Shown piece after piece: positions 35,721 through 64,000 of a stretch of 64,000 bases of DNA. A program made the position numbers and the translations under genes. Below the pieces are notes generated by a model. The model made no database searches and was not told the DNA's origin. It worked only from the letters and a program-made list of their open reading frames with translations. Source of the stretch: Paramoeba atlantica (Eukaryota > Protista > Discosea); the NCBI GenBank assembly GCA_977017575.1, contig CDRNVI010000164.1, forward strand, positions 310,001 through 374,000, given 5' to 3'. The first letter of the stretch is position 1. The number at the start of each line of letters is the position of its first letter.

Positions 35721-36169
35721 TCTTTTGGATGAATGAAAAGAAGGGTGGAAATACCTGCGGAAACTCTTTGGGATCAAGATTTTCCTCAATCAGTTCCTCT
35801 GAGACCACTTTTTCTTGATGTTTTTGAAAAGGATTCTTTGGGAGAGCATTTCCCATTATCTTCTCCAACACAGAAAAGTCTCTTTTTCCCCAACCCGAAA
35901 AGTTTCTTTCTGTTCGTTCCGGTTCCGTGTTTTGAGAAATTTTGGGAACCAAGCAAGTTTTCACTGATTTGGAAACCCAAAGAATCTAATTTTAATTAAT
36001 TTTGAACAAACCAAACAAACAACAGAAAACAAACAACACAGAAAAACACAAAACACAAAAAAAGGGAGGGAGACACCAAAGAGGACACCAAACTGCAACT
36101 CTTCGGTTTTGTTTTGGTCGTTTTCTGTTGTTGGTCTCTTTGGTTTTCTCTTTTTGGTTGAGTCGAACA

Positions 36170-37354
36170 ATGACGAGAGTTCTGTTGGGAGCAACTTTGT
36201 TCCTAATCGTCCTTCTGTTTGATCCTTGTTCACAGAGAATCTTTCGTGTTCCTTTGCTTCGCAAAGGATTGAATAACCAAAGGATGAGGATCATTCAAGA
36301 TGTCACTATGGCAACTCTTCTTGGCGCAGCGGTTGAACTCCCAAAACACATCGCCTCTCGCAAGAACTGTGATTTTGGTGCTAAATGTGCGAGAGTATAC
36401 TTCTCAGATACTCCTTTTTGGGAACTTTTCGACCGGAAGATCACTACTGAGAAACTGGTTCAAATTGGTGTAATTTTACGAAATTCTTCGTCTGTTCATT
36501 CCGTCGAGACAGTAAGGAGCCAATGGCCAATTACCGCGAGCTCTTTACACATCTTGAATTCTTCACAGAGTTGCTCGGGTCATCTTTGTTCTTTTGGTCA
36601 AAGCGATTGTTGTATCAAGTTGATCCCAAACACCCCGATGGCGGTCCGTGTTCTGAAGAGTGTAAATCATGCTTTTGAAAGTGCACAGAGGTATCGGATT
36701 ATGGCTGCCAAAATAATTTCTGCTTTCAAGAAGGAGACTCAACAGGATTTTATCGTCGCTATGCATTGGCGTCTGGATGATGATTTCATTAAATCTGCCC
36801 ATGCCCTTTCTCCTCAGACTTATTGTGCCGAATTCCTCAGAGGAATGGGTCTTGCGAGAAATAGGACACTTCCAAGTGACTCAACTTCGAACCTTCACAT
36901 TCTAGTACTCGGTGAAAGCTCTGTCTCCAAAGTGGAGAAGATTTTGCGATCTTGTACTCCACCACAAATGAAGACCTTCTACACACTCCACTCAAAAGAT
37001 ACACTTCTGGACAAAAGTGAGTTTAATGTCCTCGAAGAAGTCAATACTGATTTGAAGGGACAGCTTGATTTTGAGCTGGGAGGAAAAGCAACCTTTTTTC
37101 TGGGAAGTCCATTTTCTTCGTTCTCAGTTTTGATAGCTTTTTATCGCTTTGGATCTCCCCACTACAAGCCACTCATGACCTTAATGGCAAATGTCGATGT
37201 AAAAGATCATTTAGGATCTCTTTTTTCTGCTGTATTTCCTTACTCACAAGTACTTGCTGACAATCCATACAAATGTTCAACGACTGCCAATGCCTTTGCT
37301 CCTTTCCACCGACCTCTTGGATCGTGTATTTTTGAGGAGAAAAAGAGATCCTAG
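36170..37354 (+). CDS. O-fucosyltransferase-like protein, copy 2, intronless
   Basis: GLNNQRMRII, VAMHWRLDDDF and QLDFELGGKATFFLGSPFSSFS; paralog of 33509-34909. Confidence 0.8.
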   Translation: MTRVLLGATLFLIVLLFDPCSQRIFRVPLLRKGLNNQRMRIIQDVTMATLLGAAVELPKHIASRKNCDFGAKCARVYFSDTPFWELFDRKITTEKLVQIGVILRNSSSVHSVETVRSQWPITASSLHILNSSQSCSGHLCSFGQSDCCIKLIPNTPMAVRVLKSVNHAFESAQRYRIMAAKIISAFKKETQQDFIVAMHWRLDDDFIKSAHALSPQTYCAEFLRGMGLARNRTLPSDSTSNLHILVLGESSVSKVEKILRSCTPPQMKTFYTLHSKDTLLDKSEFNVLEEVNTDLKGQLDFELGGKATFFLGSPFSSFSVLIAFYRFGSPHYKPLMTLMANVDVKDHLGSLFSAVFPYSQVLADNPYKCSTTANAFAPFHRPLGSCIFEEKKRS

Positions 37355-52848: not shown

Positions 52849-54924
52849 TTATTTTGCTTTCTCCCAGAATTGAACTGTCTTTGTCTTCTGATCAGAAACA
52901 ATGATTCCACCTCCAAAATCAACACAAACCCCAAACGGACTCTGAGACTGACCCGAACCAAAAGAAAAGAGAAAAGTTCCATCTTTCTCAAATACACAAA
53001 CTCTCTTATTTTCAGAATCAGCAACAACAATCCGATCTCTTCCATCAACTGAAAGACCAGAAGGACCATTCAATTTCGAACCTCGTGAATCTTTCGATCC
53101 AAAAGTTCGAATAAAATTTCCTTCGATATCCATCACCTGAATTCGATGATTCCAATAATCAGAAACAACAATATTTCCCTCCTGATCAATTGCAATTCCA
53201 TTTGGGGTGTTAAATTGACCTTCAGAATTCCCCTTCGAACCAAAAGAACGGATAAAAGTTCCATCACTTTGGAAGACTTGAATTCGGTGATTTCCAGAGT
53301 CAGCAATAATAATTCGACCTTCTTCATCAATTCCGACACTTGATGGTTCCAAAAAAGCGCCTTCTTCTGAACCTTCCCCCCCAAACATATCGAGGAATTG
53401 GCCATCTTTATCCAATATTATAATTTTACAGAGCTCATAATCAACGATAACAACATCTTCGTCAACTCCGATCGCAACATCAATTGGATCTAGAAGCATT
53501 TCAGCTGGTGCAAACTCTCGAATAAACTTCCCCTCTTTGTCCCACAAAGTAACATTATGTTTACCCTCAACAACGAGAATCTTCCCATCACCCGTCTCAA
53601 CCATTCCCCACGGAAATCTCTCCAACTGAACAAGAGAAACAAGTTCAACCCCCGAAGTCACCACTCCCCTCTTCTTTGTTGAAGACCAAGAAGCCTCTCT
53701 CGCAATATCGATTGCAGTTTGAAACACAGTTGAAAACACTCCTTGATCCAAAATAGAACTGTCTATTGGTGTTTGGGACAATCGACCAATCGTATTATAT
53801 CTCATTCTTAAATCGTCCAACCCCAATCCCATTTTTGCGATCTCTGATTCTTTTAATGCCAATTGAATTCTCAGACTTTCCACTTCCTCTTCTGTCTCTT
53901 TCTTTGTCCCTCCAAGAACATCCATCTCCTTCTTTAATGTCTCTCCAATCTCTAAAATCTCATCTCGCTTTTTCTGAGCACTCTTTTCAAGAGGAACAAC
54001 CATCTCTTTATGACTTTCGTGCGTCTCCAAAACACAGGAAAGACAAACAAAAACAGAACATCGAAAACAAAAGCCACTCACAAAAACAGAAGAGTGTTCA
54101 GAACAATATTTCTTCATCTCAATTAAACTACCATCATCGAAATTGTGACCTCGGTGTTGTTGTTGTTGTTGTTGTTGTTGTTTTTGTCGTTTGTGGTTTC
54201 GAGAAAAGATGGTGGAGATGTGAGAAGGGTCGCAAGAATCGCAAATGAACATTTCGCAATTGGGGCAAAACATTGAAGTTCTCTCTCCACAACTCTCGAA
54301 ATTGATACATTTTGAATCTTCTATTGTTGATTTTTAAATTCAATTTACCAAGAAGAGAAAAAAAACTGGACAGAAACCTATCTGTTTTTTCAAAGACAGG
54401 ACTCCCTCAGAAACAAGAATCTGAATTGTTTCAGGAATCAAATAATTTTGATCGAAAGAGTCAACCGATTCACATTTAAATATTTTTCGACAAGAAGGAC
54501 AACAACAACCATCACCTCCTTTCTTCTCACTCTCTTCAAAATCATCACTTTCTTTTCTTTTCTCTGTATTCGCAACGATGCTGCTCACGGATCTTCTTGA
54601 AGAACCTGGATCCCTTGGGATGTTATTGAGAGAAGACGAAAAGGAAGAAGAAGAAGAAGAAGTAGGTATCGTAGAAGAAGGAAAAATCGTCTCTTGAGAA
54701 GGAGAAGAGAGAGAAAATAATTGTTTGAGACAATCAGAACAATAAGAATGCCCACAAGGAAGATCTCTAGGAACTTTCTCCAAACTCATCAAATCAAAAC
54801 AAATTCCACACTCAAACCCTCCATAAAATTCACTCTTCTTCTCATCATCATGTCCTCTCTTTTCTCTTTTCACTCCCCTTTTCTCATCTCTCTTACCCAC
54901 CCGTTTCCTCTTCCCTTTTTCCAT
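52849..54924 (-). CDS. TRIM-NHL-type protein (RING, two B-boxes, coiled coil, NHL repeats)
   Basis: RING CGICFDL...LPCGHSYCSDC...CPSCR; B-boxes FCPNCEMFICDSC...H and CSEH...FCFRCSVFVCLSCVLETHESH; coiled coil; NHL repeats such as FNTPNGIAIDQEGNIVVSDYWNHRIQV. Confidence 0.88.
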
Positions 54925-55974: not shown

Positions 55975-58037
55975 TTAAGATGTGTTCTGAAGAACAATCC
56001 TGGCAATAGATTTCCAAGAAGGATAATCTTTTCTTGAATAAAAATTCACAACTTCTTCAAATTTGAAATGAAGACCATATTTGAGTGCTGATACCTCAAC
56101 AAGTCCTGTCAAAGCCAACATATCCGCTCTTGTTGCTATTTTGAACAAAGAAAAAACCAAAAAGAAATTATTTTTAAAAAGAAGAGAGGAAAAAGAAGAG
56201 AAAATGAGGATAAAATATTTAAAAGAAAACCTGTGAGATTTTCATTGACAGGATTACCATGAAGATCTGTTCGGGGATTGCGATTCCATCGATTGAATGT
56301 ATGAAGAGTGTTATCTCCTGTTTCGTTTGCGAGGACTGTCAGCGCCACCGTTCCATTTGAAGACTTGGAAGAAGAAAAGATTTCATCAGTTCAGAAAGAA
56401 GAAAGAATAAAGTATTAAAAAAAATATTTAAAAAAAATATTAAAAAAAAACCTCCAAATCTTTCCTCAACCAATAACCACCATTTTTACAAATCTTATTC
56501 CCCTCAATCTCCAACCTCACAACCTCACTCTTCACAAACTGCCGACACAACATTGGAAGTCTTAACCAAGTTTTTGGATCATTTGGATCATTTGGATAAG
56601 TTACAAGTATTTGATAAAATGACATTTCCTCTTTAATTAAATCCATGCTCATGTCTTTTGGGGGAAGTAGCTGGACGGGTTTTTTGAGAAAAAAGAAAAG
56701 GAATGAAAAAAAAAAAAGAAAAATGGACCTTTCCCGTTCGAAGAAAATTTAATACAACAGCAAATGCATCCCCATCTCGATCCACATAAACATATCCATC
56801 TATTTATCATTCAAAATACAAATATTAGTTCAGTTCTGGTCCCTTTTCAAGAAAGAGAGAATGAAAAATTAAATCAAGATGAATGGTACCTTCATCAAGA
56901 AGGGAAGGCAAAGAACCATCCAAGTGTCTCTCTAACATTCGAGTCAACATATTTTCTCCCTACAAAACATTGATTAAAAAGGAAAAGAAAACATATAAAG
57001 AAAAGAGATTGATTTGAAAAAGGAAAAAGAATAAGAATAAAAGAAAACGAGTGATCAAAAAAACCAACCTGAGAAGCTAAAGTTGTCCAAGAAGTAACAT
57101 ACCGTCGACCACCAACATTCAATTTAACCATCTTCTCCCCTCCTCTCTCCCCTTTTTCTCCTTTTTCTCCTCTCTCAGTTTTCTCAGCTCTTTCTCCTCT
57201 CTCTCCTTTTTCTCCCCCTCCACTACTCTCAAAATTCTTCTCAATCTCTCTCCCCCAACTCCCAGCAATAACTCTCCCACTCTCCTCACCTCCCTCTCCC
57301 TTCTTCCCATTCATAATCGGTATAAAAATAGTCGTAGTAATAGAAGAAGAAGAAGAAGAAGGAGAGGGACTTTCATCACATCCACCCTTTGTAAGAAGAC
57401 CCAAATCTCCAACACTCCGACTACTACTACTCGATCCTCCGTTATTGCCAACTCCGATTCCACTCTCATTTTCAAAGACAAAATCTTCCCCCAATTCAAG
57501 AAAGGAATCCCTCCTTTTGCTGTTGGAAGAGAAAACATTTTCCGATCCAAATCCATGGCCAGAACTAGAACTGGTTCCTCCAAACCCTCCGCTTCTATTG
57601 AAAGGAGAAGAAGGGAAAGTAGCAAAGGAAGAAGGAGATAGGCTACTAAAACCAGTACAAGGAGATGTAGAACCACTTTCTATTACACTTGTGGGAGAAA
57701 TAACCTCTTCTCCTCTTTCTCCTCCTTTTGTTCTTTTTTGACAGTGGCAACAACAAGTACAAACACGAAGTTTTCGAGAGGAAGCAGTTCTTTGATGTTC
57801 TTCTCCTCCCTCATCTGTTCCTTCTTCTCTCTTTTCAACGAAAGAAGCTCTCTTTTCCCGAGGAGATCTCTTTTCCTCCCCAGAACTCTCTCCTTTTGAT
57901 CTCTCTCTTTCCCCTTTCCCTCCAGAACGATTTCGAGAAGAAGAAGGAGGAGAAAGAGTCCCCGTTTGATCCCCATGTTTTACTCTTGAACCTTTCTTTC
58001 GATCCTTTTTCTTCTCATCTTCTGAGGCATGGAACAT
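55975..58037 (-). CDS. KCTD-type BTB/POZ protein with long low-complexity N-terminus (multi-exon, one probable frameshift near 56775)
   Basis: VKLNVGGRRYVTSWTTLASQ|GENMLTRML...|DGYVYVDRDG(D)AFAVVLNFLRTGK; the last part requires one extra G in a G-run. Confidence 0.75.
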
Positions 58038-58306
58038 GACACAAATCAACCACCCTGTGTTTTTGTCTCCTCCTTCTCTCCGATCTCTGTTCTCCTCTCT
58101 CTTTTACAACTTTTACCTCGTTTCACAACTTTCACTTCAAAAAAAAGGAGGAAAAAAATCTTTAAAAAATCCGACATAAAATTTCGGATTTTGAGTTTTC
58201 TCACTTTTGTTTGTTTTTGGATTTTCGTGTTTTTTTGTGTTTTTTGTGTTTTTGTGAGAGGGGTCGGCCGTTTGTCCTCTTCGTGTTGTGAAGAAAGGAA
58301 CAAGAG

Positions 58307-58873
58307 ATGACTTCTTTCTTAGTAGAACAAGCTGTTTCCTCTCAAGTTGGAGATGCAAAAGACTCCATGGGGTCTCTCTCTCTTTCTTTCTTTTTCAAAC
58401 CACCTTTCCTTTGTTTTTTTTCAATTGATTTTTCTTTTTTTCTTTTCAGATTCGGAGATGAAGACAAAGGAGAGTCAGATCAAGAAAGGAGAAAAAGGTA
58501 CCAAGAACACGAACAGAGAGAAAGGGAAAATGATAGAAAGTTAAAAGAGAAGGCAGATCGCCGACATGAATCATCACGGGTCAAGAACGATGCCTTGCGA
58601 TCAAAGTAAGCCAAATTCATTTTTCTCCTTTTTTTCTCTTCTCTGCCTTCTTTGGGAACTGTTCTTGTGATTATGGAATATCCAAGAATCTTCGTTTTTA
58701 AGAATCTTTTTGCTTGATACTCCTTTATTGAATGATCTCTTAGGTATGGACTATCAGATAAAAAGAAAGGCAGCCAATACCAACCAATCGGTACTTCCGA
58801 AAGAGCTTCGCTTCTTCGTTCTCCTCCACCACCACGAGAAAAGGGGTGTTGTCAATCTTGCGTTCTCCTGTGA
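58307..58873 (+). CDS. Complexin-like 116-aa helical protein with CAAX (3 exons)
   Basis: Exons 58307-58371, 58450-58605 and 58744-58873 (GT-AG) give MTSFLVEQAVSSQVGDAKDSMGFGDEDKGESDQERRKRYQEHEQRERENDRKLKEKADRRHESSRVKNDALRSKYGLSDKKKGSQYQPIGTSERASLLRSPPPPREKGCCQSCVLL. Confidence 0.65.
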
Positions 58874-59327
58874 TTTTTCTTCAAAGGAAGTCCACTGAAC
58901 AGAGAGTTTCCTTTTGTCTGTAGACTTAATCTCCCATAATAACCACAACAATCACCCACCAACAAGAAATAACTCATCTTGTTGGGCAGTTCAAAAAGGG
59001 ATCTTTTACCCAACCCTTTTTTTTGAATTTTAACTTGTTGGTAGCTCGAATATTCTGGAAGAATATCAAACAAACAAAGATATTTATCAATAACCACAAC
59101 TGTAACTGTGTTATCCCTTTGAAAGACCAGACTTTTCTCGATTTGATTAATTTATTGATTTGATAGGGTGAATGAGAAACGGAAATTCTTTGGAGTCAAA
59201 ACTCATCATTAACATTCTTGATAGAGTTTCAATAACATCTTTCTCTTCAGAACAAACGAGCTCGACAACACTTATCTCTTCTCAAGAAAAGTGTTGGGAA
59301 GTGAAGTTAATTACAATTGTTCTTTTT

Positions 59328-59921
59328 TCACGTCAGAACACAACTACGCTGATTTTTCTTCGACTGTTTCGTTTTCTTGATTGGAACAGAACGAATTGCT
59401 TCATCAAAAACCTGTTTGACGTCTTCAGAACTCATTGCACTGCACTCCACATACTTTGCTCCAATGTCTTTCGCAAGCTCGCTTCCCGTCTCTTTTGAAA
59501 TTGGTTTCAATCCTCTTTCCATCTCCAAGATTGCAAAAGTATCAGATCGAAGATCACACTTAGTTCCTACGAGAATAATTTCTGCAGAAGGACAATGGTG
59601 TTCGATTTCTGGAATCCACTTGCATTGGACATTCTCAAAGGATGATGGAGACATCACTGAGAAACAGACCAAGAAAACATCTGTGTTTGAGTAAGAAAGA
59701 GGGCGCAATCGATCATACTCCTCTTGGCCTGTTGTATCCCACAGACCCAAGCAGATTAGTTTTTCCCCCACGAAGCAGAGGCTTTCATGATTCTCGAAAA
59801 CTGTTGGGATGGACTGTGTCGGGAAAGATTTTTTTGTATAGGCAATTAACAAGCAAGTCTTCCCAACAGTTCCATCCCCAACCACAACACACTTAATTGT
59901 TTGTACGATGGTCTTTTCCAT
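59328..59921 (-). CDS. Atypical Rac/Rho-family GTPase, intronless, CAAX CVLT
   Basis: [31 protein letters not shown] and ECSA. Confidence 0.92.
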
Positions 59922-60431
59922 TTTTTTTGTTTACAAGTCTTCGTTCGCAAGATTCCCTCCATTGAACTTCAGAAAGGAACTTCTGAAACTATTTTCAGTT
60001 ATTGATCCCCAGGAATGACCTTTTAGGGCAGGAAGTCCCGAACCAATTTGGAACTCCAAATTTTGGTGAAAAGAGAACGAATTTCTTGTCATTGACAATT
60101 GGTTGTTCATTCGAAAGTTCAAATCGAGGAACAGGTCTGAAAGATAAGAAGAAAATTTTGAATGAATTAATTTATTTGGTTGGGTGAAAAAGAAACCAAG
60201 GTGGTTGTCAGATGTTCAAAGAGAATCTCTCTCTTTCAACCAAATGATGCAACCCAATATCGTGTTTCTCTCCGAAAGTTTTCTCATCTCTCTCAATAAA
60301 GGTGATGGAAGTGGATTAGGAGAGTATTAAAACTGCCAGCTCCACCAAAAAGACAACTGCCTCTTTGGCTCACAGAGAAGAGGCGAAAAGGCGGTTTAAC
60401 AGATATATAGTTCACTTCAAATCCTCTTTTC

Positions 60432-61022
60432 TCACATCAAAATACAACCATGGCGATTTTTCTTCGATGGCTTCATTTGAAGAGGTGGATAAAGAACTAA
60501 ACGAACTGCTTCATCAAAAACATCTTTGACACCTTGAGAAGTCTTTGCACTGCATTCCACATATCTTGCTGCTCCAATATCTTTCGCAAGCCCACTTCCC
60601 ATCTCGTTCGAAATTGGTTCCAAATCTCTTTCCTCCATTTTCGACATTGCAAAAGGGTCAGATTGAAGATCACACTTAGTTCCTACGAGAAGAATTTTTG
60701 CAGAAGGACAGTGGTGTTCGATTTCTCCAATCCACTTGCATCGGACATTCTCAAAGGATGATGGAGACATCACTGAGAAACAAACCAAGAAAACATCTGT
60801 GCCAGGGTAAGAAAGAGGGCGCAATCGATCATACTCTCCTTGGCCTGCTGTGTCCCACAGACCCAAGTTGATGGACTTTCCATCGACTTGGCTCATGTTT
60901 CCGTAATTATCGAAAACTGTGGGGATGTATTCTTGTGGGAAAGAATTTGTTGTGTACACAATGAACAAACAAGTTTTTCCAACAGCTCCGTCTCCAACCA
61001 CAACACACTTAATTGATTGCAT
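60432..61022 (-). CDS. Rac/Rho-family GTPase, intronless, CAAX CILM
   Basis: [26 protein letters not shown] and ECSAK. Confidence 0.95.
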
Positions 61023-61462
61023 CTTTTTCTTTTTCCTTTTCTTTTCTCTTCCAAAACGATTTGTAAGAAACAAGAAGAGAGGAGGTGAACAGTTTTGAGT
61101 GAAAACAGGATGACCTTTTATGGGAATCGGAAGTCGTGAACCAATTTGGAATTCCAGATTTTGTGGAAAGAGAACGAATTTCTTGTCATTGGCAATTGGC
61201 AATTGGTTGTTCATTCAAAAGTTCAAATAAAGGAACAGGTCCTGAAAGAAAAGAAGAAATTTTGGATGAATTAATTAATTTATTTGGTTGGGTGAAAAAG
61301 AAACCAAGGTGGTTGTCAGATGTTCAAAGAGAATCTCTCTCTCTTTCAACCAAATGATGAACAACCCAATATCGTGTTTCTCTCCGAAAGTTTTCTCATC
61401 TCTCTCTCTCAATAAAGGTGGTTGAATAAAAATGAAGATAGTTCACTTCAAATCCTCTTTTC

Positions 61463-62053
61463 TCACATCAAAATACAACCATGGCGATTTTTCTTCGATG
61501 GCTTCATTTGAAGAGGTGGATAAAGAACTGAACGAATTGCTTCATTAAAAACACGTTTCACACCTTGAGAAGTCTTTGCACTGCATTCCACATATCTTGT
61601 TGCTCCAATCTCTTTCGCAAGCTCACTTCCCATCTCGTTCGAAATTGGTTCCAAATCTCTTTCCTCCATTTTCGACATTACAGAAGGGTCAGATCGAAGA
61701 TCACACTTAGTTCCTACGAGAATAATTTTTGCAGAAGGACAATGTTGTTCGATTTCTCCAATCCACTTGCATCGGACATTCTCAAAGGATGATGGAGACA
61801 TCACTGAGAAACAAACCAAGAAAACATCTGTGCTTGGGTAAGAAAGAGGGCGCAATCGATCATAGTCTTCTTGGCCTGCTGTATCCCACAGACCCAAGTT
61901 GATGGACTTTCCATCGACTTGGCAATGGGTTCCGTAATTATCGGAAACTGTTGGGATGTATTCTTGTGGGAAAGAATTTGTTGTGTACACAATCAACAAA
62001 CAAGTTTTTCCGACAGCTCCGTCTCCAACCACAACACACTTAATTGTTTGCAT
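61463..62053 (-). CDS. Rac/Rho-family GTPase, intronless, CAAX CILM
   Basis: [17 protein letters not shown] and WDTAGQEDY. Confidence 0.95.
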
Positions 62054-62482
62054 CTTTTTCCTTTTTTTCTTTTCTTTTCTCTTCCAAAACGATTTGTAAG
62101 AAACATCTTTCTCGAACTTCAAGAAAAAGGGAACCAAGAAACGAGGAGGTGAAAAGTTTTTAGCGAAAACGGGGTGACCTTTTATGGGAATCGGAAGTCG
62201 TGAACCAATTCCAGATTTTGAAGAGAACTGACTGTACCACTCAAAAGTTCAAATAAAGGAACAGGTCCTGAAAGAAAAGAAGAAATTTTGAATGAATTAA
62301 TTTATTTGGTTGGGTGAAAGAAACCAAGGTGGTTGTCAGATGTTCAAAGAGAATCTCTCTCTCTTTCAACCAAATGATGAACAACCCAATATCGTGTTTC
62401 TCTCCGAAAGTTTTCTCATCTCTCTCTCTCAATAAAGGTGGTTGAATAAAAATGAAGACAGTTCACTCCAGACCCTCTTTTC

Positions 62483-63076
62483 TCACATCAAAATACAACC
62501 ACGGCGATTTTTCTTCGATGGCTTCATTTTCTGGACAGACGGAAAAAGAACTGAACGAATTGCTTCATCAAAAACACTTTTCACACCTTGAGAAGTCATT
62601 GCACTGCATTCCACATATCTTGCTGCTCCAATATCTTTCGCAAGCCCACTTCCCATCTCGTTTGAAATTGGTTCCAAACCTCTTTCCTCCATTTTCGACA
62701 TTGCAAAAGGGTCAGATCGAAGATCACACTTAGTTCCTACGAGAATAATTTTTGCAGAAGAACAATAGTGTTCGATCTCTGGAATCCACTTGCATCGGAC
62801 ATTCTCAAAGGATGATGGAGACATCACTGAGAAACAAACCAAGAAAACATCTGTGCTTGGGTAAGAAAGAGGGCGCAATCGATCATAGTCTTCTTGGCCT
62901 GCTGTGTCCCACAGACCCAAGTTGATGACCTTTCCGTCGACTTGGCAATGAGTTCCGTAATTATCGAAAACTGTTGGGATGTATTCTTGTGGGAAAGAAT
63001 TTGTTGTGTACACAATCAACAGACAAGTTTTTCCAACAGCTCCGTCTCCAACCGCAACACACTTAATTGATTGCAT
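62483..63076 (-). CDS. Rac/Rho-family GTPase, intronless, CAAX CILM
   Basis: [17 protein letters not shown] and WDTAGQEDY. Confidence 0.95.
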
Positions 63077-64000
63077 CTTTTTCCTTTTTCCTTTTCTTTT
63101 CTCTTCCAAAACGATTTGTAAGAAACATCTTTCTCGAACTTCAAGAAAAAGTGAACCAAGAAACGAGAAGTTGAAAAGTTTTTGGTGAAAACGGGAACGA
63201 CACCAATTATTTCCTTTTGTGTAGCAATAAAGTAAACCGATGTTTTTGGGGGTTCAAAACTTTGGCAAAAAACATTTATTTATTTCACAAATTGGATTGC
63301 ACTTTCAAATTAAAAATGAGGGAACGAAATACGTTTTTAAATGACAATAATTATCATTTTGGAACAGCAGAAGTATGTTTGGAGTGTCGCTTCCCACATT
63401 TTTCACAATAATAAGACCCACTCGTCTCTTGTTCAGCTCTCGCGAAAGAGAATTCATCCGGTTTTGCCAAGGTCGGTCCGTCTGTGAGGGAAGTAACAAA
63501 AGGTGAGATACTCAAGTTCGACAATGGATCAGCCATTGAGATGGACGGGATCTCTTTTGATGGGATCGCGCGTGACATGAAAGAGGAGGAGGGTGGGCCT
63601 CCAGAAAGGTTCGATGAAGGAGAAGAAGTACTACTGGACGAAGAAGAGGAAGAAGAGCAGCCCTTTGAGGAACTTGAACCTTTGCAAGAGGAGAGTGAAG
63701 AACCAGTCGGGCAACCAGGTGGAAGAGAAGGAGGAACAAGAAAGGGGACAGCCAATTTTCCATTGGATATTTTATGACAGGCCGCCATCAAGTCATAAGC
63801 GATTCCAGGAGATACAATAGAATCCTTTTTTTAAAAAAAAACAAAGCTTAGATTTCTAACTAAAGGGTAGGAGAGAAAAGAAGAAATGAGATTACATTTT
63901 TGTAGAAAGGATGTTTCTGAACAAAGGATCTCATCCAATTTGCAGTTGTTTGGAGTTCACCTGAAGCTCTCTTCCCTATAAACACCAGATACTGCCAAAA

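What the first reader, a model, noticed from the sequence alone, without database searches (positions are those of the whole stretch)
58307..58873. Complexin-like SNARE-regulator candidate with C-terminal CAAX in an apparent non-animal genome
Three clean GT-AG exons give 116 aa with the complexin layout. The N-terminus MTSFLVEQAVSSQVGDAKDSMGFGDEDKG compares with complexin-3/4 type MAFMVKxMVGGQLK...GGGEDKG. A charged accessory and central helix ends in LRSKYGL (complexins end in IRDKYGI/L), followed by a low-complexity tail and CCQSCVLL (prenylation motif as in complexin-3/4, plus possible palmitoylation). Complexins control Ca2+-triggered vesicle fusion and are known from animals and close unicellular relatives. 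A true homolog in an amoebozoan-like protist would push the origin of this synaptic regulator much deeper.
Basis: partly seen in the sequence, partly recalled or inferred. Interest (0 to 1): 0.78.

Follow-up and report, generated by a model that had tools for sequence, protein, structure and literature searches.

The report
Complexin-like gene in an amoeba
A small, expressed three-exon gene in an amoebozoan genome encodes a lipid-anchored protein that matches animal complexins, the regulators of vesicle fusion at synapses, so this family may be much older than animals and their closest relatives.

Summary
Exons 58307-58371, 58450-58605 and 58744-58873 (GT-AG introns of 78 and 138 nt) give a 116-aa protein ending in CVLL. 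A transcript-like public contig joins 58605 to 58744 exactly.

Searches with single exons or the intron-retaining ORF found nothing: Pfam, word search, exhaustive phmmer, PDB and ESM Atlas. I fetched real complexins by reference (12 metatranscriptome cDNAs, 120 database proteins, all PF05835) and built profiles.

- **Profile match:** the spliced protein scores 28.0 bits (E 1e-10) in a gapless alignment of residues 1-98 to model 1-98.
- **Shuffle control:** none of 100,000 composition-preserving shuffles reaches that score.
- **hhalign:** E 5e-6.
- **Intron position:** intron 2 lies 1 nt from the RDK|YG intron of mite and midge complexin genes.
- **Host:** the D123 gene on the same contig groups with Amoebozoa.

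Against canonical membership, two of the four SNARE-contact residues defined by mutation are missing (R48 and R59 equivalents). The C-terminal amphipathic helix is absent. No orthologue was found, and SNARE binding is untested.

Verdict: probably (about 0.65) a divergent complexin-family homologue outside Holozoa, a new variant of a known kind. The spliced protein has no reference, so it was analysed only inside scripts.

The parts
58307..58371 (+). Exon 1 (65 nt): residues 1-21 plus two bases of G22. This is the complexin-type N-terminal domain, M-x-x-F-L-V-E-Q-A-V.
   Evidence: It aligns from model position 1 of the complexin profiles. There is an in-frame stop 6 codons upstream.
58372..58449 (+). 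Intron 1: 78 nt, GT..AG, phase 2 in codon 22, in frame and without a stop.
   Evidence: The public gene call P0001 reads through it. hhalign of complexin alignment A1 against P0001 skips this stretch as a gap. No read evidence is available, because the region was masked as repeat.
58450..58605 (+). Exon 2 (156 nt): residues 22-74 (part). It holds the G-x-G-D-E-D-K linker and the charged accessory/central helix up to L71 R72 S73 K74.
   Evidence: It is covered by RNA-like contig X1 record 3 from 58457.
58606..58743 (+). Intron 2: 138 nt, GTAAGC..TTAG, phase 2 inside the K74 codon. It lies 1 nt from the phase-0 RDK|YG intron of arthropod complexin genes.
   Evidence: The splice joint 58605|58744 appears in X1, while DNA run X3 is contiguous.
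58744..58873 (+). Exon 3 (130 nt): Y75 G76 L77, a K-rich stretch, a proline-rich tail, C109 and C110, the CAAX box C113-V-L-L (58859-58870), and stop TGA at 58871-58873.
   Evidence: Global hhalign pairs the CAAX box with the complexin C-x-x-Q box. A synonymous A>G at 58834 appears in DNA run X3.

Best explanation
This is an expressed gene for a divergent member of the complexin (synaphin) lineage in an amoebozoan.

Proposed mechanism:
1. The short N-terminal domain and the charged helix (about residues 30-77) dock on an assembled or assembling exocytic SNARE bundle. The membrane-proximal end of the helix (L71, R72, K74, Y75, L77) would make the conserved contacts.
2. The C-terminus is geranylgeranylated at C113 (CVLL) and probably palmitoylated at C109/C110. 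This anchor holds the protein on vesicle or plasma membrane and replaces the amphipathic membrane-binding helix of animal complexins.
3. The membrane-tethered helix tunes the rate of regulated exocytosis in the amoeba.

Shown here: the gene model, its transcription and the splicing of intron 2, the statistical match to complexins, the similar exon layout, and the amoebozoan host. Inferred: SNARE binding, lipidation, and the effect on fusion.
For: - **Profile match.** A profile of 12 complexin cDNAs scores the spliced protein at 28.0 bits, E 1.1e-10 (Z=1). The alignment is gapless from Met1 to residue 98 and puts K-Y-G on K-Y-G. A profile of 132 PF05835 proteins gives 23.1 bits, E 2.4e-9.
- **Controls.** Shuffles that keep the composition of the N-terminal, helix and tail segments reached the score 0 of 100,000 times for the first profile and 1 of 100,000 for the second. 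The extrapolated p is 6e-6 to 1.5e-5. The best of 738 real ORFs from the window scores 8 bits.
- **hhalign.** The local alignment has probability 86%, E 5e-6 and 31% identity over 74 columns. The global alignment also pairs the CAAX boxes.
- **Conserved columns.** 16 of the 45 alignable columns that are at least 90% conserved are identical, including M1, F4, Q8, K18, G22, K54-E55-K56, R72, K74, Y75 and K80.
- **Independent features.** The C-terminal CAAX matches all 12 bait complexins. The exon layout is 65/156/130 nt against 55/164/... in mite and midge. Intron 2 is 1 nt from their RDK|YG intron.
- **Expression.** The spliced contig is in run X1.
- **Host.** The closest named D123 relatives are Dracoamoeba, Arcella, Rhizamoeba, Gocevia, Flabellula, Mastigella and Physarum at 47-54% identity. 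In the tree the window's D123 sits inside that clade.
Against: - Rat R48 and R59 of the '4M' SNARE-binding set (PMC4927292) correspond to L53 and S64 here. The Y52 and R63 equivalents are also lost.
- There is no amphipathic helix in the 39-aa C-terminal domain. The best 14-mer hydrophobic moment is 0.12, against 0.40-0.55 in complexins.
- Single exons and the read-through ORF give no Synaphin hit in Pfam and no complexin hit in PDB, the 5.8-billion word search or the 1.84-billion exhaustive phmmer. In my own profiles those same pieces score only 4-5 bits, so these blanks are expected.
- No orthologue from any other non-holozoan was found.
- The profiles are arthropod-dominated.
- The helix is charge-rich, a kind of sequence that inflates scores.
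- The intron match is off by 1 nt, and AAG|TAT resembles a proto-splice site.
Confidence: 0.65

Rival explanations
1. This is an unrelated, lineage-specific small protein, a charged helix with a prenyl anchor. Its resemblance to complexin would be chance or convergence, and it would act on something other than SNAREs, for example as a membrane-tethered adaptor.
For: No relative of any kind turned up in the database searches with the referenced pieces. Half of the mutation-defined SNARE contacts and the amphipathic C-terminal helix are missing. Charged helices give inflated scores: segment shuffles reach 25 bits at most.
Against: The score exceeds 100,000 composition- and layout-matched shuffles. 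The alignment is gapless and anchored at Met1, with identical spacing to K-Y-G. The CAAX box and the near-coincident intron are independent of that score. No other Pfam family fits; the only hit is PRP4 at 13.9 bits, below its cutoff of 25.
Confidence: 0.25
2. It is a true complexin homologue, but it was acquired by horizontal transfer from a holozoan into this amoeba lineage, not inherited from the common ancestor of Amoebozoa and Opisthokonta.
For: No amoebozoan orthologue was detected. The exon layout resembles the animal gene. The window is rich in transposons.
Against: Identity to animal complexins is only about 30%, so any transfer would be ancient. The introns are short and pyrimidine-rich, and the flanking genes have amoebozoan affinity.
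Confidence: 0.07
3. The contig is a contaminant from an animal or other holozoan, so the gene is an ordinary complexin.
For: The assembly record is an ENA analysis of unstated purity. B-box/NHL and laminin-G domains occur in the window.
Against: D123 lies on the same 124-kb contig, 27 kb away, and nests within Amoebozoa with 93/98 support. The protein is far more divergent than any of the complexins found. Four DNA runs of one organism hold the stretch.
Confidence: 0.03

Closest known systems
Invertebrate CAAX-box complexins (Pfam PF05835 Synaphin; e.g. arthropod complexin, loci L002-L013, P0072-P0191)
   Same: - N-terminal M-x-x-F-[ILV]-x-x-Q motif at residue 1.
- Glycine at position 22.
- A charged helix of the same length.
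- [IL]-R-x-K-Y-G-[IL] at residues 71-77.
- A lysine run after that motif.
- L-x-R and proline further on.
- A C-terminal CAAX box.
- A tiny first exon, and an intron at the K/Y junction.

Sources.
   Different: - 116 aa against 140-155 aa.
- The R53, H57, R64 and R68 equivalents are not kept.
- No amphipathic helix before the CAAX box.
- CVLL predicts geranylgeranyl, where C-x-x-Q predicts farnesyl.
- Two extra cysteines sit upstream of the CAAX box.
- The intron is in phase 2, not phase 0.
- The host is an amoebozoan.
Mammalian complexin-1 (PDB 5w5c_E, 1kil_E) and complexin-3/4
   Same: The domain order is the same: N-terminal domain, accessory helix, central helix, C-terminal domain. The I66/R67/K69/Y70/I72 equivalents are kept as L71/R72/K74/Y75/L77. 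There is a CAAX box as in complexin-3/4 (PMC4611016). Vertebrate cplx3/4 genes also have three exons and two introns (PMC2941751).
   Different: The R48, Y52, R59 and R63 equivalents are lost. Complexin-1/2 has no CAAX box. Nothing ties the candidate specifically to the 3/4 subfamily.
Unicellular holozoan complexins (Monosiga brevicollis, Capsaspora owczarzaki)
   Same: These are the non-animal complexins reported in the papers I could read (PMC4137706, PMC13454271). Like them, this gene sits in a unicellular organism without synapses.
   Different: Those organisms are Holozoa, whereas this host is Amoebozoa. Their sequences could not be fetched here, so no direct comparison was made.

Membership tests
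Complexin / Synaphin (PF05835) | Significant match of the whole protein to a family profile | tested here: met
   Profiles were built from PF05835-annotated proteins and score 28.0 bits (E 1.1e-10) and 23.1 bits (E 2.4e-9). At most 1 of 100,000 segment-preserving shuffles reaches the score. hhalign gives E 5e-6.
Complexin / Synaphin (PF05835) | Score above Pfam's own gathering threshold with Pfam's own model | not testable with these tools
   The spliced 116-aa protein has no reference and was not typed into the Pfam tool. Exon pieces and the read-through ORF gave no hit, but such pieces score only 4-5 bits in my profiles too.
Complexin / Synaphin (PF05835) | N-terminal domain motif at the very N-terminus | tested here: met
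   M1, F4 and Q8 are identical, and positions 5, 6, 9, 10 and 14 are hydrophobic as in complexins. The alignment starts at model position 1.
Complexin / Synaphin (PF05835) | Central helix with the SNARE-contact residues R48, R59, K69, Y70 (rat numbering; the 4M mutant abolishes binding, PMC4927292) | tested here: inconclusive
   K69/Y70 are kept as K74/Y75, and I66/R67/I72 as L71/R72/L77. R48 becomes L53 and R59 becomes S64 in the gapless alignment. A one-residue shift would restore R59 as R65.
Complexin / Synaphin (PF05835) | Amphipathic helix in the C-terminal domain (predicted in all known complexins, PMC5445133) | tested here: not met
   The best proline-free 14-mer hydrophobic moment is 0.12, against 0.40-0.55 in 12 complexins. 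The C-terminal domain is 39 aa and proline-rich.
Complexin / Synaphin (PF05835) | C-terminal membrane anchor: a hydrophobic motif or a CAAX box | tested here: met
   The protein ends C-V-L-L, with two cysteines 3-4 residues upstream. All 12 bait complexins end in C-x-x-Q.
Complexin / Synaphin (PF05835) | Shared intron position at the K|Y junction of the central-helix motif | tested here: inconclusive
   Mite and midge have a phase-0 intron between K and Y. The candidate's intron is in phase 2 inside the K codon, 1 nt away. The chance of such a near-hit is roughly 3%.
Complexin / Synaphin (PF05835) | Binding to the assembled SNARE complex | not testable with these tools
   No multimer prediction or assay is available, and the organism's SNAREs are not in the window.

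The most novel reading that the evidence does not exclude
The complexin family predates Holozoa. A lipid-anchored, synaptotagmin-independent SNARE regulator already existed in the common ancestor of Amoebozoa and Opisthokonta, and this amoebozoan keeps a stripped-down form: N-terminal domain, helix with the K-Y-G motif, and a prenyl/palmitoyl anchor in place of the amphipathic helix.
Probability: 0.5. Interest if true: 0.8.

Novelty: new variant of a known kind. Interest (0 to 1): 0.68.

Why it matters
The papers I could read report complexin from animals, the choanoflagellate Monosiga and the filasterean Capsaspora (PMC4137706, PMC13454271). They use it as a marker of the pre-animal secretory apparatus. 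A homologue in Amoebozoa would move its origin back to the ancestor of Amorphea and would imply losses in fungi and other lineages. [quoted passage not shown] This minimal form suggests that the N-terminal domain, the membrane-proximal end of the central helix and a lipid anchor are the ancient core. The amphipathic C-terminal helix and the upstream arginine contacts would then be later additions, or losses in this lineage.

Tried and rejected
- **Pfam on pieces.** Scans of the three exon translations and of the intron-1-retaining ORF gave no Synaphin hit, only PRP4 below its cutoff.
- **Word-index search.** The read-through ORF found only itself, P0001.
- **Exhaustive phmmer.** Against 1.84 billion representatives it found itself plus one spurious hit on intron-encoded residues.
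- **PDB phmmer.** No complexin was found.
- **ESM Atlas.** The candidate's helix, and a real complexin with PF05835 clusters left out, both gave no usable hit.
- **Why these blanks are uninformative.** The same pieces score only 4-5 bits in profiles that score the spliced protein at 23-28 bits.
- **Taxonomy by RNA.** Rfam and tRNA scans of the window were empty.
- **Synteny walk.** Starting from the D123 orthologue of a related ENA assembly, only D123 itself is shared, so no second amoebozoan locus was reached.
- **Earlier scan notes.** None mention complexin or SNARE.
- **Papers.** Yang et al. 2015 (PMC4766454) is not held.
- **Left out.** The spliced 116-aa protein has no reference, so it was not given to Pfam, PDB, the database searches, structure prediction or the Atlas. 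It was assembled from window.fa only inside scripts.
- **Considered and rejected.** A G-protein gamma subunit or other known CAAX family has no Pfam support.
- **Bait.** The back-translated I-R-D-K-Y-x-[IL]-K-K-K-E-E pattern came from memory. It served only to fetch real sequences, which were then validated by PF05835 annotation and PDB hits.

Full report
**The gene model.** An ATG at 58307 follows an in-frame stop six codons upstream. Exon 1 (58307-58371) ends at a GT donor. Intron 1 (58372-58449, 78 nt) is pyrimidine-rich and ends in CAG. Exon 2 is 58450-58605. Intron 2 (58606-58743, 138 nt) runs from GTAAGC to TTAG. Exon 3 (58744-58873) ends in TGA. The 351-nt coding sequence gives 116 residues:
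- a hydrophobic/small N-terminus;
- a G-x-G-D-E-D-K linker;
- a helix-like stretch of about 50 residues rich in R, K, E and D;
- L-R-S-K-Y-G-L at residues 71-77;
- a lysine run and a proline-rich tail;
- C-C-Q-S-C-V-L-L at the end.

Intron 1 is in frame and has no stop. The only public gene call on this contig (P0001, 100 aa) therefore reads through it and stops at the donor of intron 2.

**Expression.** Five public runs of one coded organism hold the stretch. A 239-nt contig of run X1 matches 58457-58605 and then 58744-58833 without a mismatch. It skips exactly the 138 nt of intron 2 (GT..AG). A contig of DNA run X3 runs straight through 58454-59462. The gene is therefore transcribed and intron 2 is removed as predicted. 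Contigs of X1 also cover the divergent upstream neighbour. Intron 1 could not be checked, because the tool masked 58368-58453 as repeat. The one variant seen in the coding sequence (A>G at 58834, run X3) is synonymous.

**The host.** The contig is ENA ERZ24900291 ctg3980l, 123,945 nt. Rfam and tRNA scans of the window were empty. The D123/CDC123 gene at 29538-31058 has these closest named relatives, at 47-54% identity:
- Dracoamoeba
- Arcella
- Rhizamoeba
- Gocevia
- Flabellula
- Mastigella
- Physarum

Thecamonas is at 38%. In a maximum-likelihood tree the window's protein sits inside the clade of amoebozoan rows (support 93/98), apart from apusomonads, a rhizarian and a dinoflagellate. This is one gene, but it is clear. 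Earlier notes of the scan disagree about the organism ('amoeba' against 'kinetoplastid-like'). My result agrees with 'amoeba'.

**First searches were blank, and why.** Pfam scans of the three exon translations and of the read-through ORF gave no Synaphin hit. The word-index search found only P0001. The exhaustive phmmer against 1.84 billion representatives found P0001 and one spurious match to intron-encoded residues. PDB and the ESM Atlas gave nothing. These searches therefore saw the protein only in pieces.

**Fetching real complexins by reference.** I scanned the metagenome collection with a back-translated I-R-D-K-Y-x-[IL]-K-K-K-E-E pattern, recalled from memory and used only as bait. It returned 12 contigs. 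Each carries an uninterrupted ORF of about 140-155 aa with an M-A-A-F-I-A-K-Q start, the central-helix motif and a C-x-x-Q end. An alignment of eleven of them (A1) retrieved 1,045 database proteins. The 120 listed are all annotated PF05835, and many are named complexin. One bait protein hits Complexin-1 chains 5w5c_E and 1kil_E and squid synaphin 1l4a_E in the PDB. The bait set is therefore genuine complexin, though dominated by arthropods.

**The homology test.** Inside scripts I assembled the spliced protein from window.fa and searched it with HMMs built from these sequences.
- The 12-sequence profile gives 28.0 bits, E 1.1e-10 for one target. The single alignment has no gaps: model positions 1-98 against residues 1-98. 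Met1 lies on Met1 and K74-Y75-G76 lies on the K-Y-G of the profile.
- The 132-sequence profile gives 23.1 bits, E 2.4e-9.
- Both hits pass HMMER's default filters.
- Exon 2 alone, or P0001 with its intron-encoded insert, scores only 4-5 bits and is filtered out. This explains every earlier blank.

Charged helices inflate scores, so I shuffled residues within three segments (1-29, 30-82, 83-116), keeping Met1. Of 100,000 such decoys, none reached 28.0 bits with the first profile (maximum 25.0). One reached 23.1 with the second. Tail fits give p of 6e-6 to 1.5e-5. The reversed sequence scores 4.5 bits. The best of 738 real ORFs from the window scores 8 bits. hhalign of the spliced protein against the 132-sequence alignment gives probability 86%, E 5e-6 and 31% identity over 74 columns. 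In global mode it also pairs the two CAAX boxes. The tool-side hhalign of A1 against P0001 gives E 0.0013 and opens one long gap over the intron-encoded residues, which supports removal of intron 1.

**Evidence independent of that score.**
- The CAAX box was not part of the HMM alignment.
- Gene structure: exact exon mapping of a mite complexin (P0131 on L014) and a midge complexin (P0079 on L015) shows exons of 55 and 164 nt, followed by C-terminal exons.
- In both arthropod genes introns fall after nt 55 (codon 19, phase 1), between K and Y of R-D-K|Y-G (phase 0), and in the C-terminal domain.
- The candidate has exons of 65, 156 and 130 nt. Its second intron lies inside the K74 codon (phase 2), one nucleotide from the arthropod position.
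- The reads cannot place the joint more finely, because G-T-A is repeated at both ends, but only the phase-2 reading is GT-AG.
- Placing two introns at random gives such a near-hit about 3% of the time. The sequence AAG|TAT also resembles a proto-splice site, so I count this as suggestive only.
- The first introns are 10 nt apart and are not the same position.

**What does not fit a canonical complexin.** With the PDB alignment as a ruler, rat R48, R59, K69 and Y70 correspond to arthropod R53, R64, K74 and Y75, and to candidate L53, S64, K74 and Y75. The '4M' mutation of these four residues abolishes SNARE binding (PMC4927292). Only the membrane-proximal half of the contact surface is kept (L71, R72, K74, Y75, L77). 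The Y52 and R63 equivalents are also lost. The C-terminal domain is 39 residues and proline-rich. It has no amphipathic helix: its best 14-mer moment is 0.12 against 0.40-0.55. Such a helix is predicted in all known complexins (PMC5445133). The CAAX box ends in L, which predicts geranylgeranylation where the animal forms predict farnesylation (established prenyltransferase rule). The two cysteines just upstream suggest palmitoylation (inference). For these reasons I file it as a divergent complexin-family homologue, not as a canonical complexin.

**Mechanism proposed.** By analogy, the helix would bind the groove of the organism's exocytic SNARE bundle through its K-Y-G end. The N-terminal domain would act at the membrane-proximal end of the bundle. 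The double lipid anchor would do the work of the amphipathic helix in concentrating the protein on membranes. The outcome would be control of the rate of regulated exocytosis, without needing a synaptotagmin partner, as proposed for the primordial function of complexin (PMC13454271). All of this is inference.

**Comparison with the literature.** The papers I could search report complexin in animals, in Monosiga brevicollis and in Capsaspora owczarzaki, with apparent absence in Salpingoeca rosetta (PMC4137706, PMC13454271, PMC4611016). Searches pairing complexin with Amoebozoa, Dictyostelium, other non-holozoan groups or the Pfam/InterPro accessions found nothing relevant. The key evolutionary paper (Yang et al. 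2015) is not held. The scan's own notes contain nothing on complexin or SNAREs.

**What remains open.** No orthologue in another amoebozoan was found. The profiles lack non-bilaterian and unicellular complexins. Pfam's own threshold was not tested on the spliced protein.

**Weighing.** In favour are the shuffle-calibrated match, the exact end-to-end collinearity, the CAAX box and the exon layout. Against are the missing contacts, the missing amphipathic helix and the single-sequence basis.
- Common ancestry with complexins by vertical descent: about 0.65.
- Common ancestry through an ancient horizontal transfer: about 0.07.
- Chance or convergent resemblance: about 0.25.
- Contamination: about 0.03.

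Noticed in passing
window 59328-63791 (- strand): Immediately downstream of the gene lies a tandem run of at least four small-GTPase ORFs with Ras/Roc/Arf-type Pfam hits. The part that was laid with reads, up to 60000, shows very high summed depth and many variant positions, which suggests a multi-copy family.
   Followed up: partly
window 58212-58312: The T-rich stretch just upstream of the start codon has summed contig depth of 280-800 in runs X2 and X5. Many loose ends fall at 58220-58252 and there is a 1-nt length variant at 58239/58240. It looks like a short dispersed or simple repeat in the promoter/5'UTR region.
   Followed up: no
window 52849-54270 (- strand): This ORF combines a B-box zinc finger with NHL repeats, a TRIM-NHL-like layout better known from animals, here in an amoebozoan contig.
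   Followed up: no
window 16528-18018 (- strand) and 36002-37351 (+ strand): The first ORF has a Laminin_G_3 (concanavalin-like) domain. The second has a weak GDP-fucose O-fucosyltransferase match.
   Followed up: no
window 58372-58449: Intron 1 is 78 nt, a multiple of three, and has no stop. If retained it would insert 26 hydrophobic residues in frame. The public prokaryote-style gene call (P0001) does exactly this.
   Followed up: partly
window 56895-58049 (- strand): A 384-aa ORF with no Pfam match runs divergently from the complexin-like gene, about 250 nt away. RNA-like contigs of run X1 cover it at 57374-57512 and 57828-58116.
   Followed up: no
L016 / L017 (ENA ERZ25074310, ERZ26867466): Two other ENA assemblies carry the same D123 orthologue (49% identical to the window's by tblastn). 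Its neighbours are entirely different (carnitine acyltransferase, CRAL_TRIO, a GTPase), so there is no synteny with the window around D123.
   Followed up: yes
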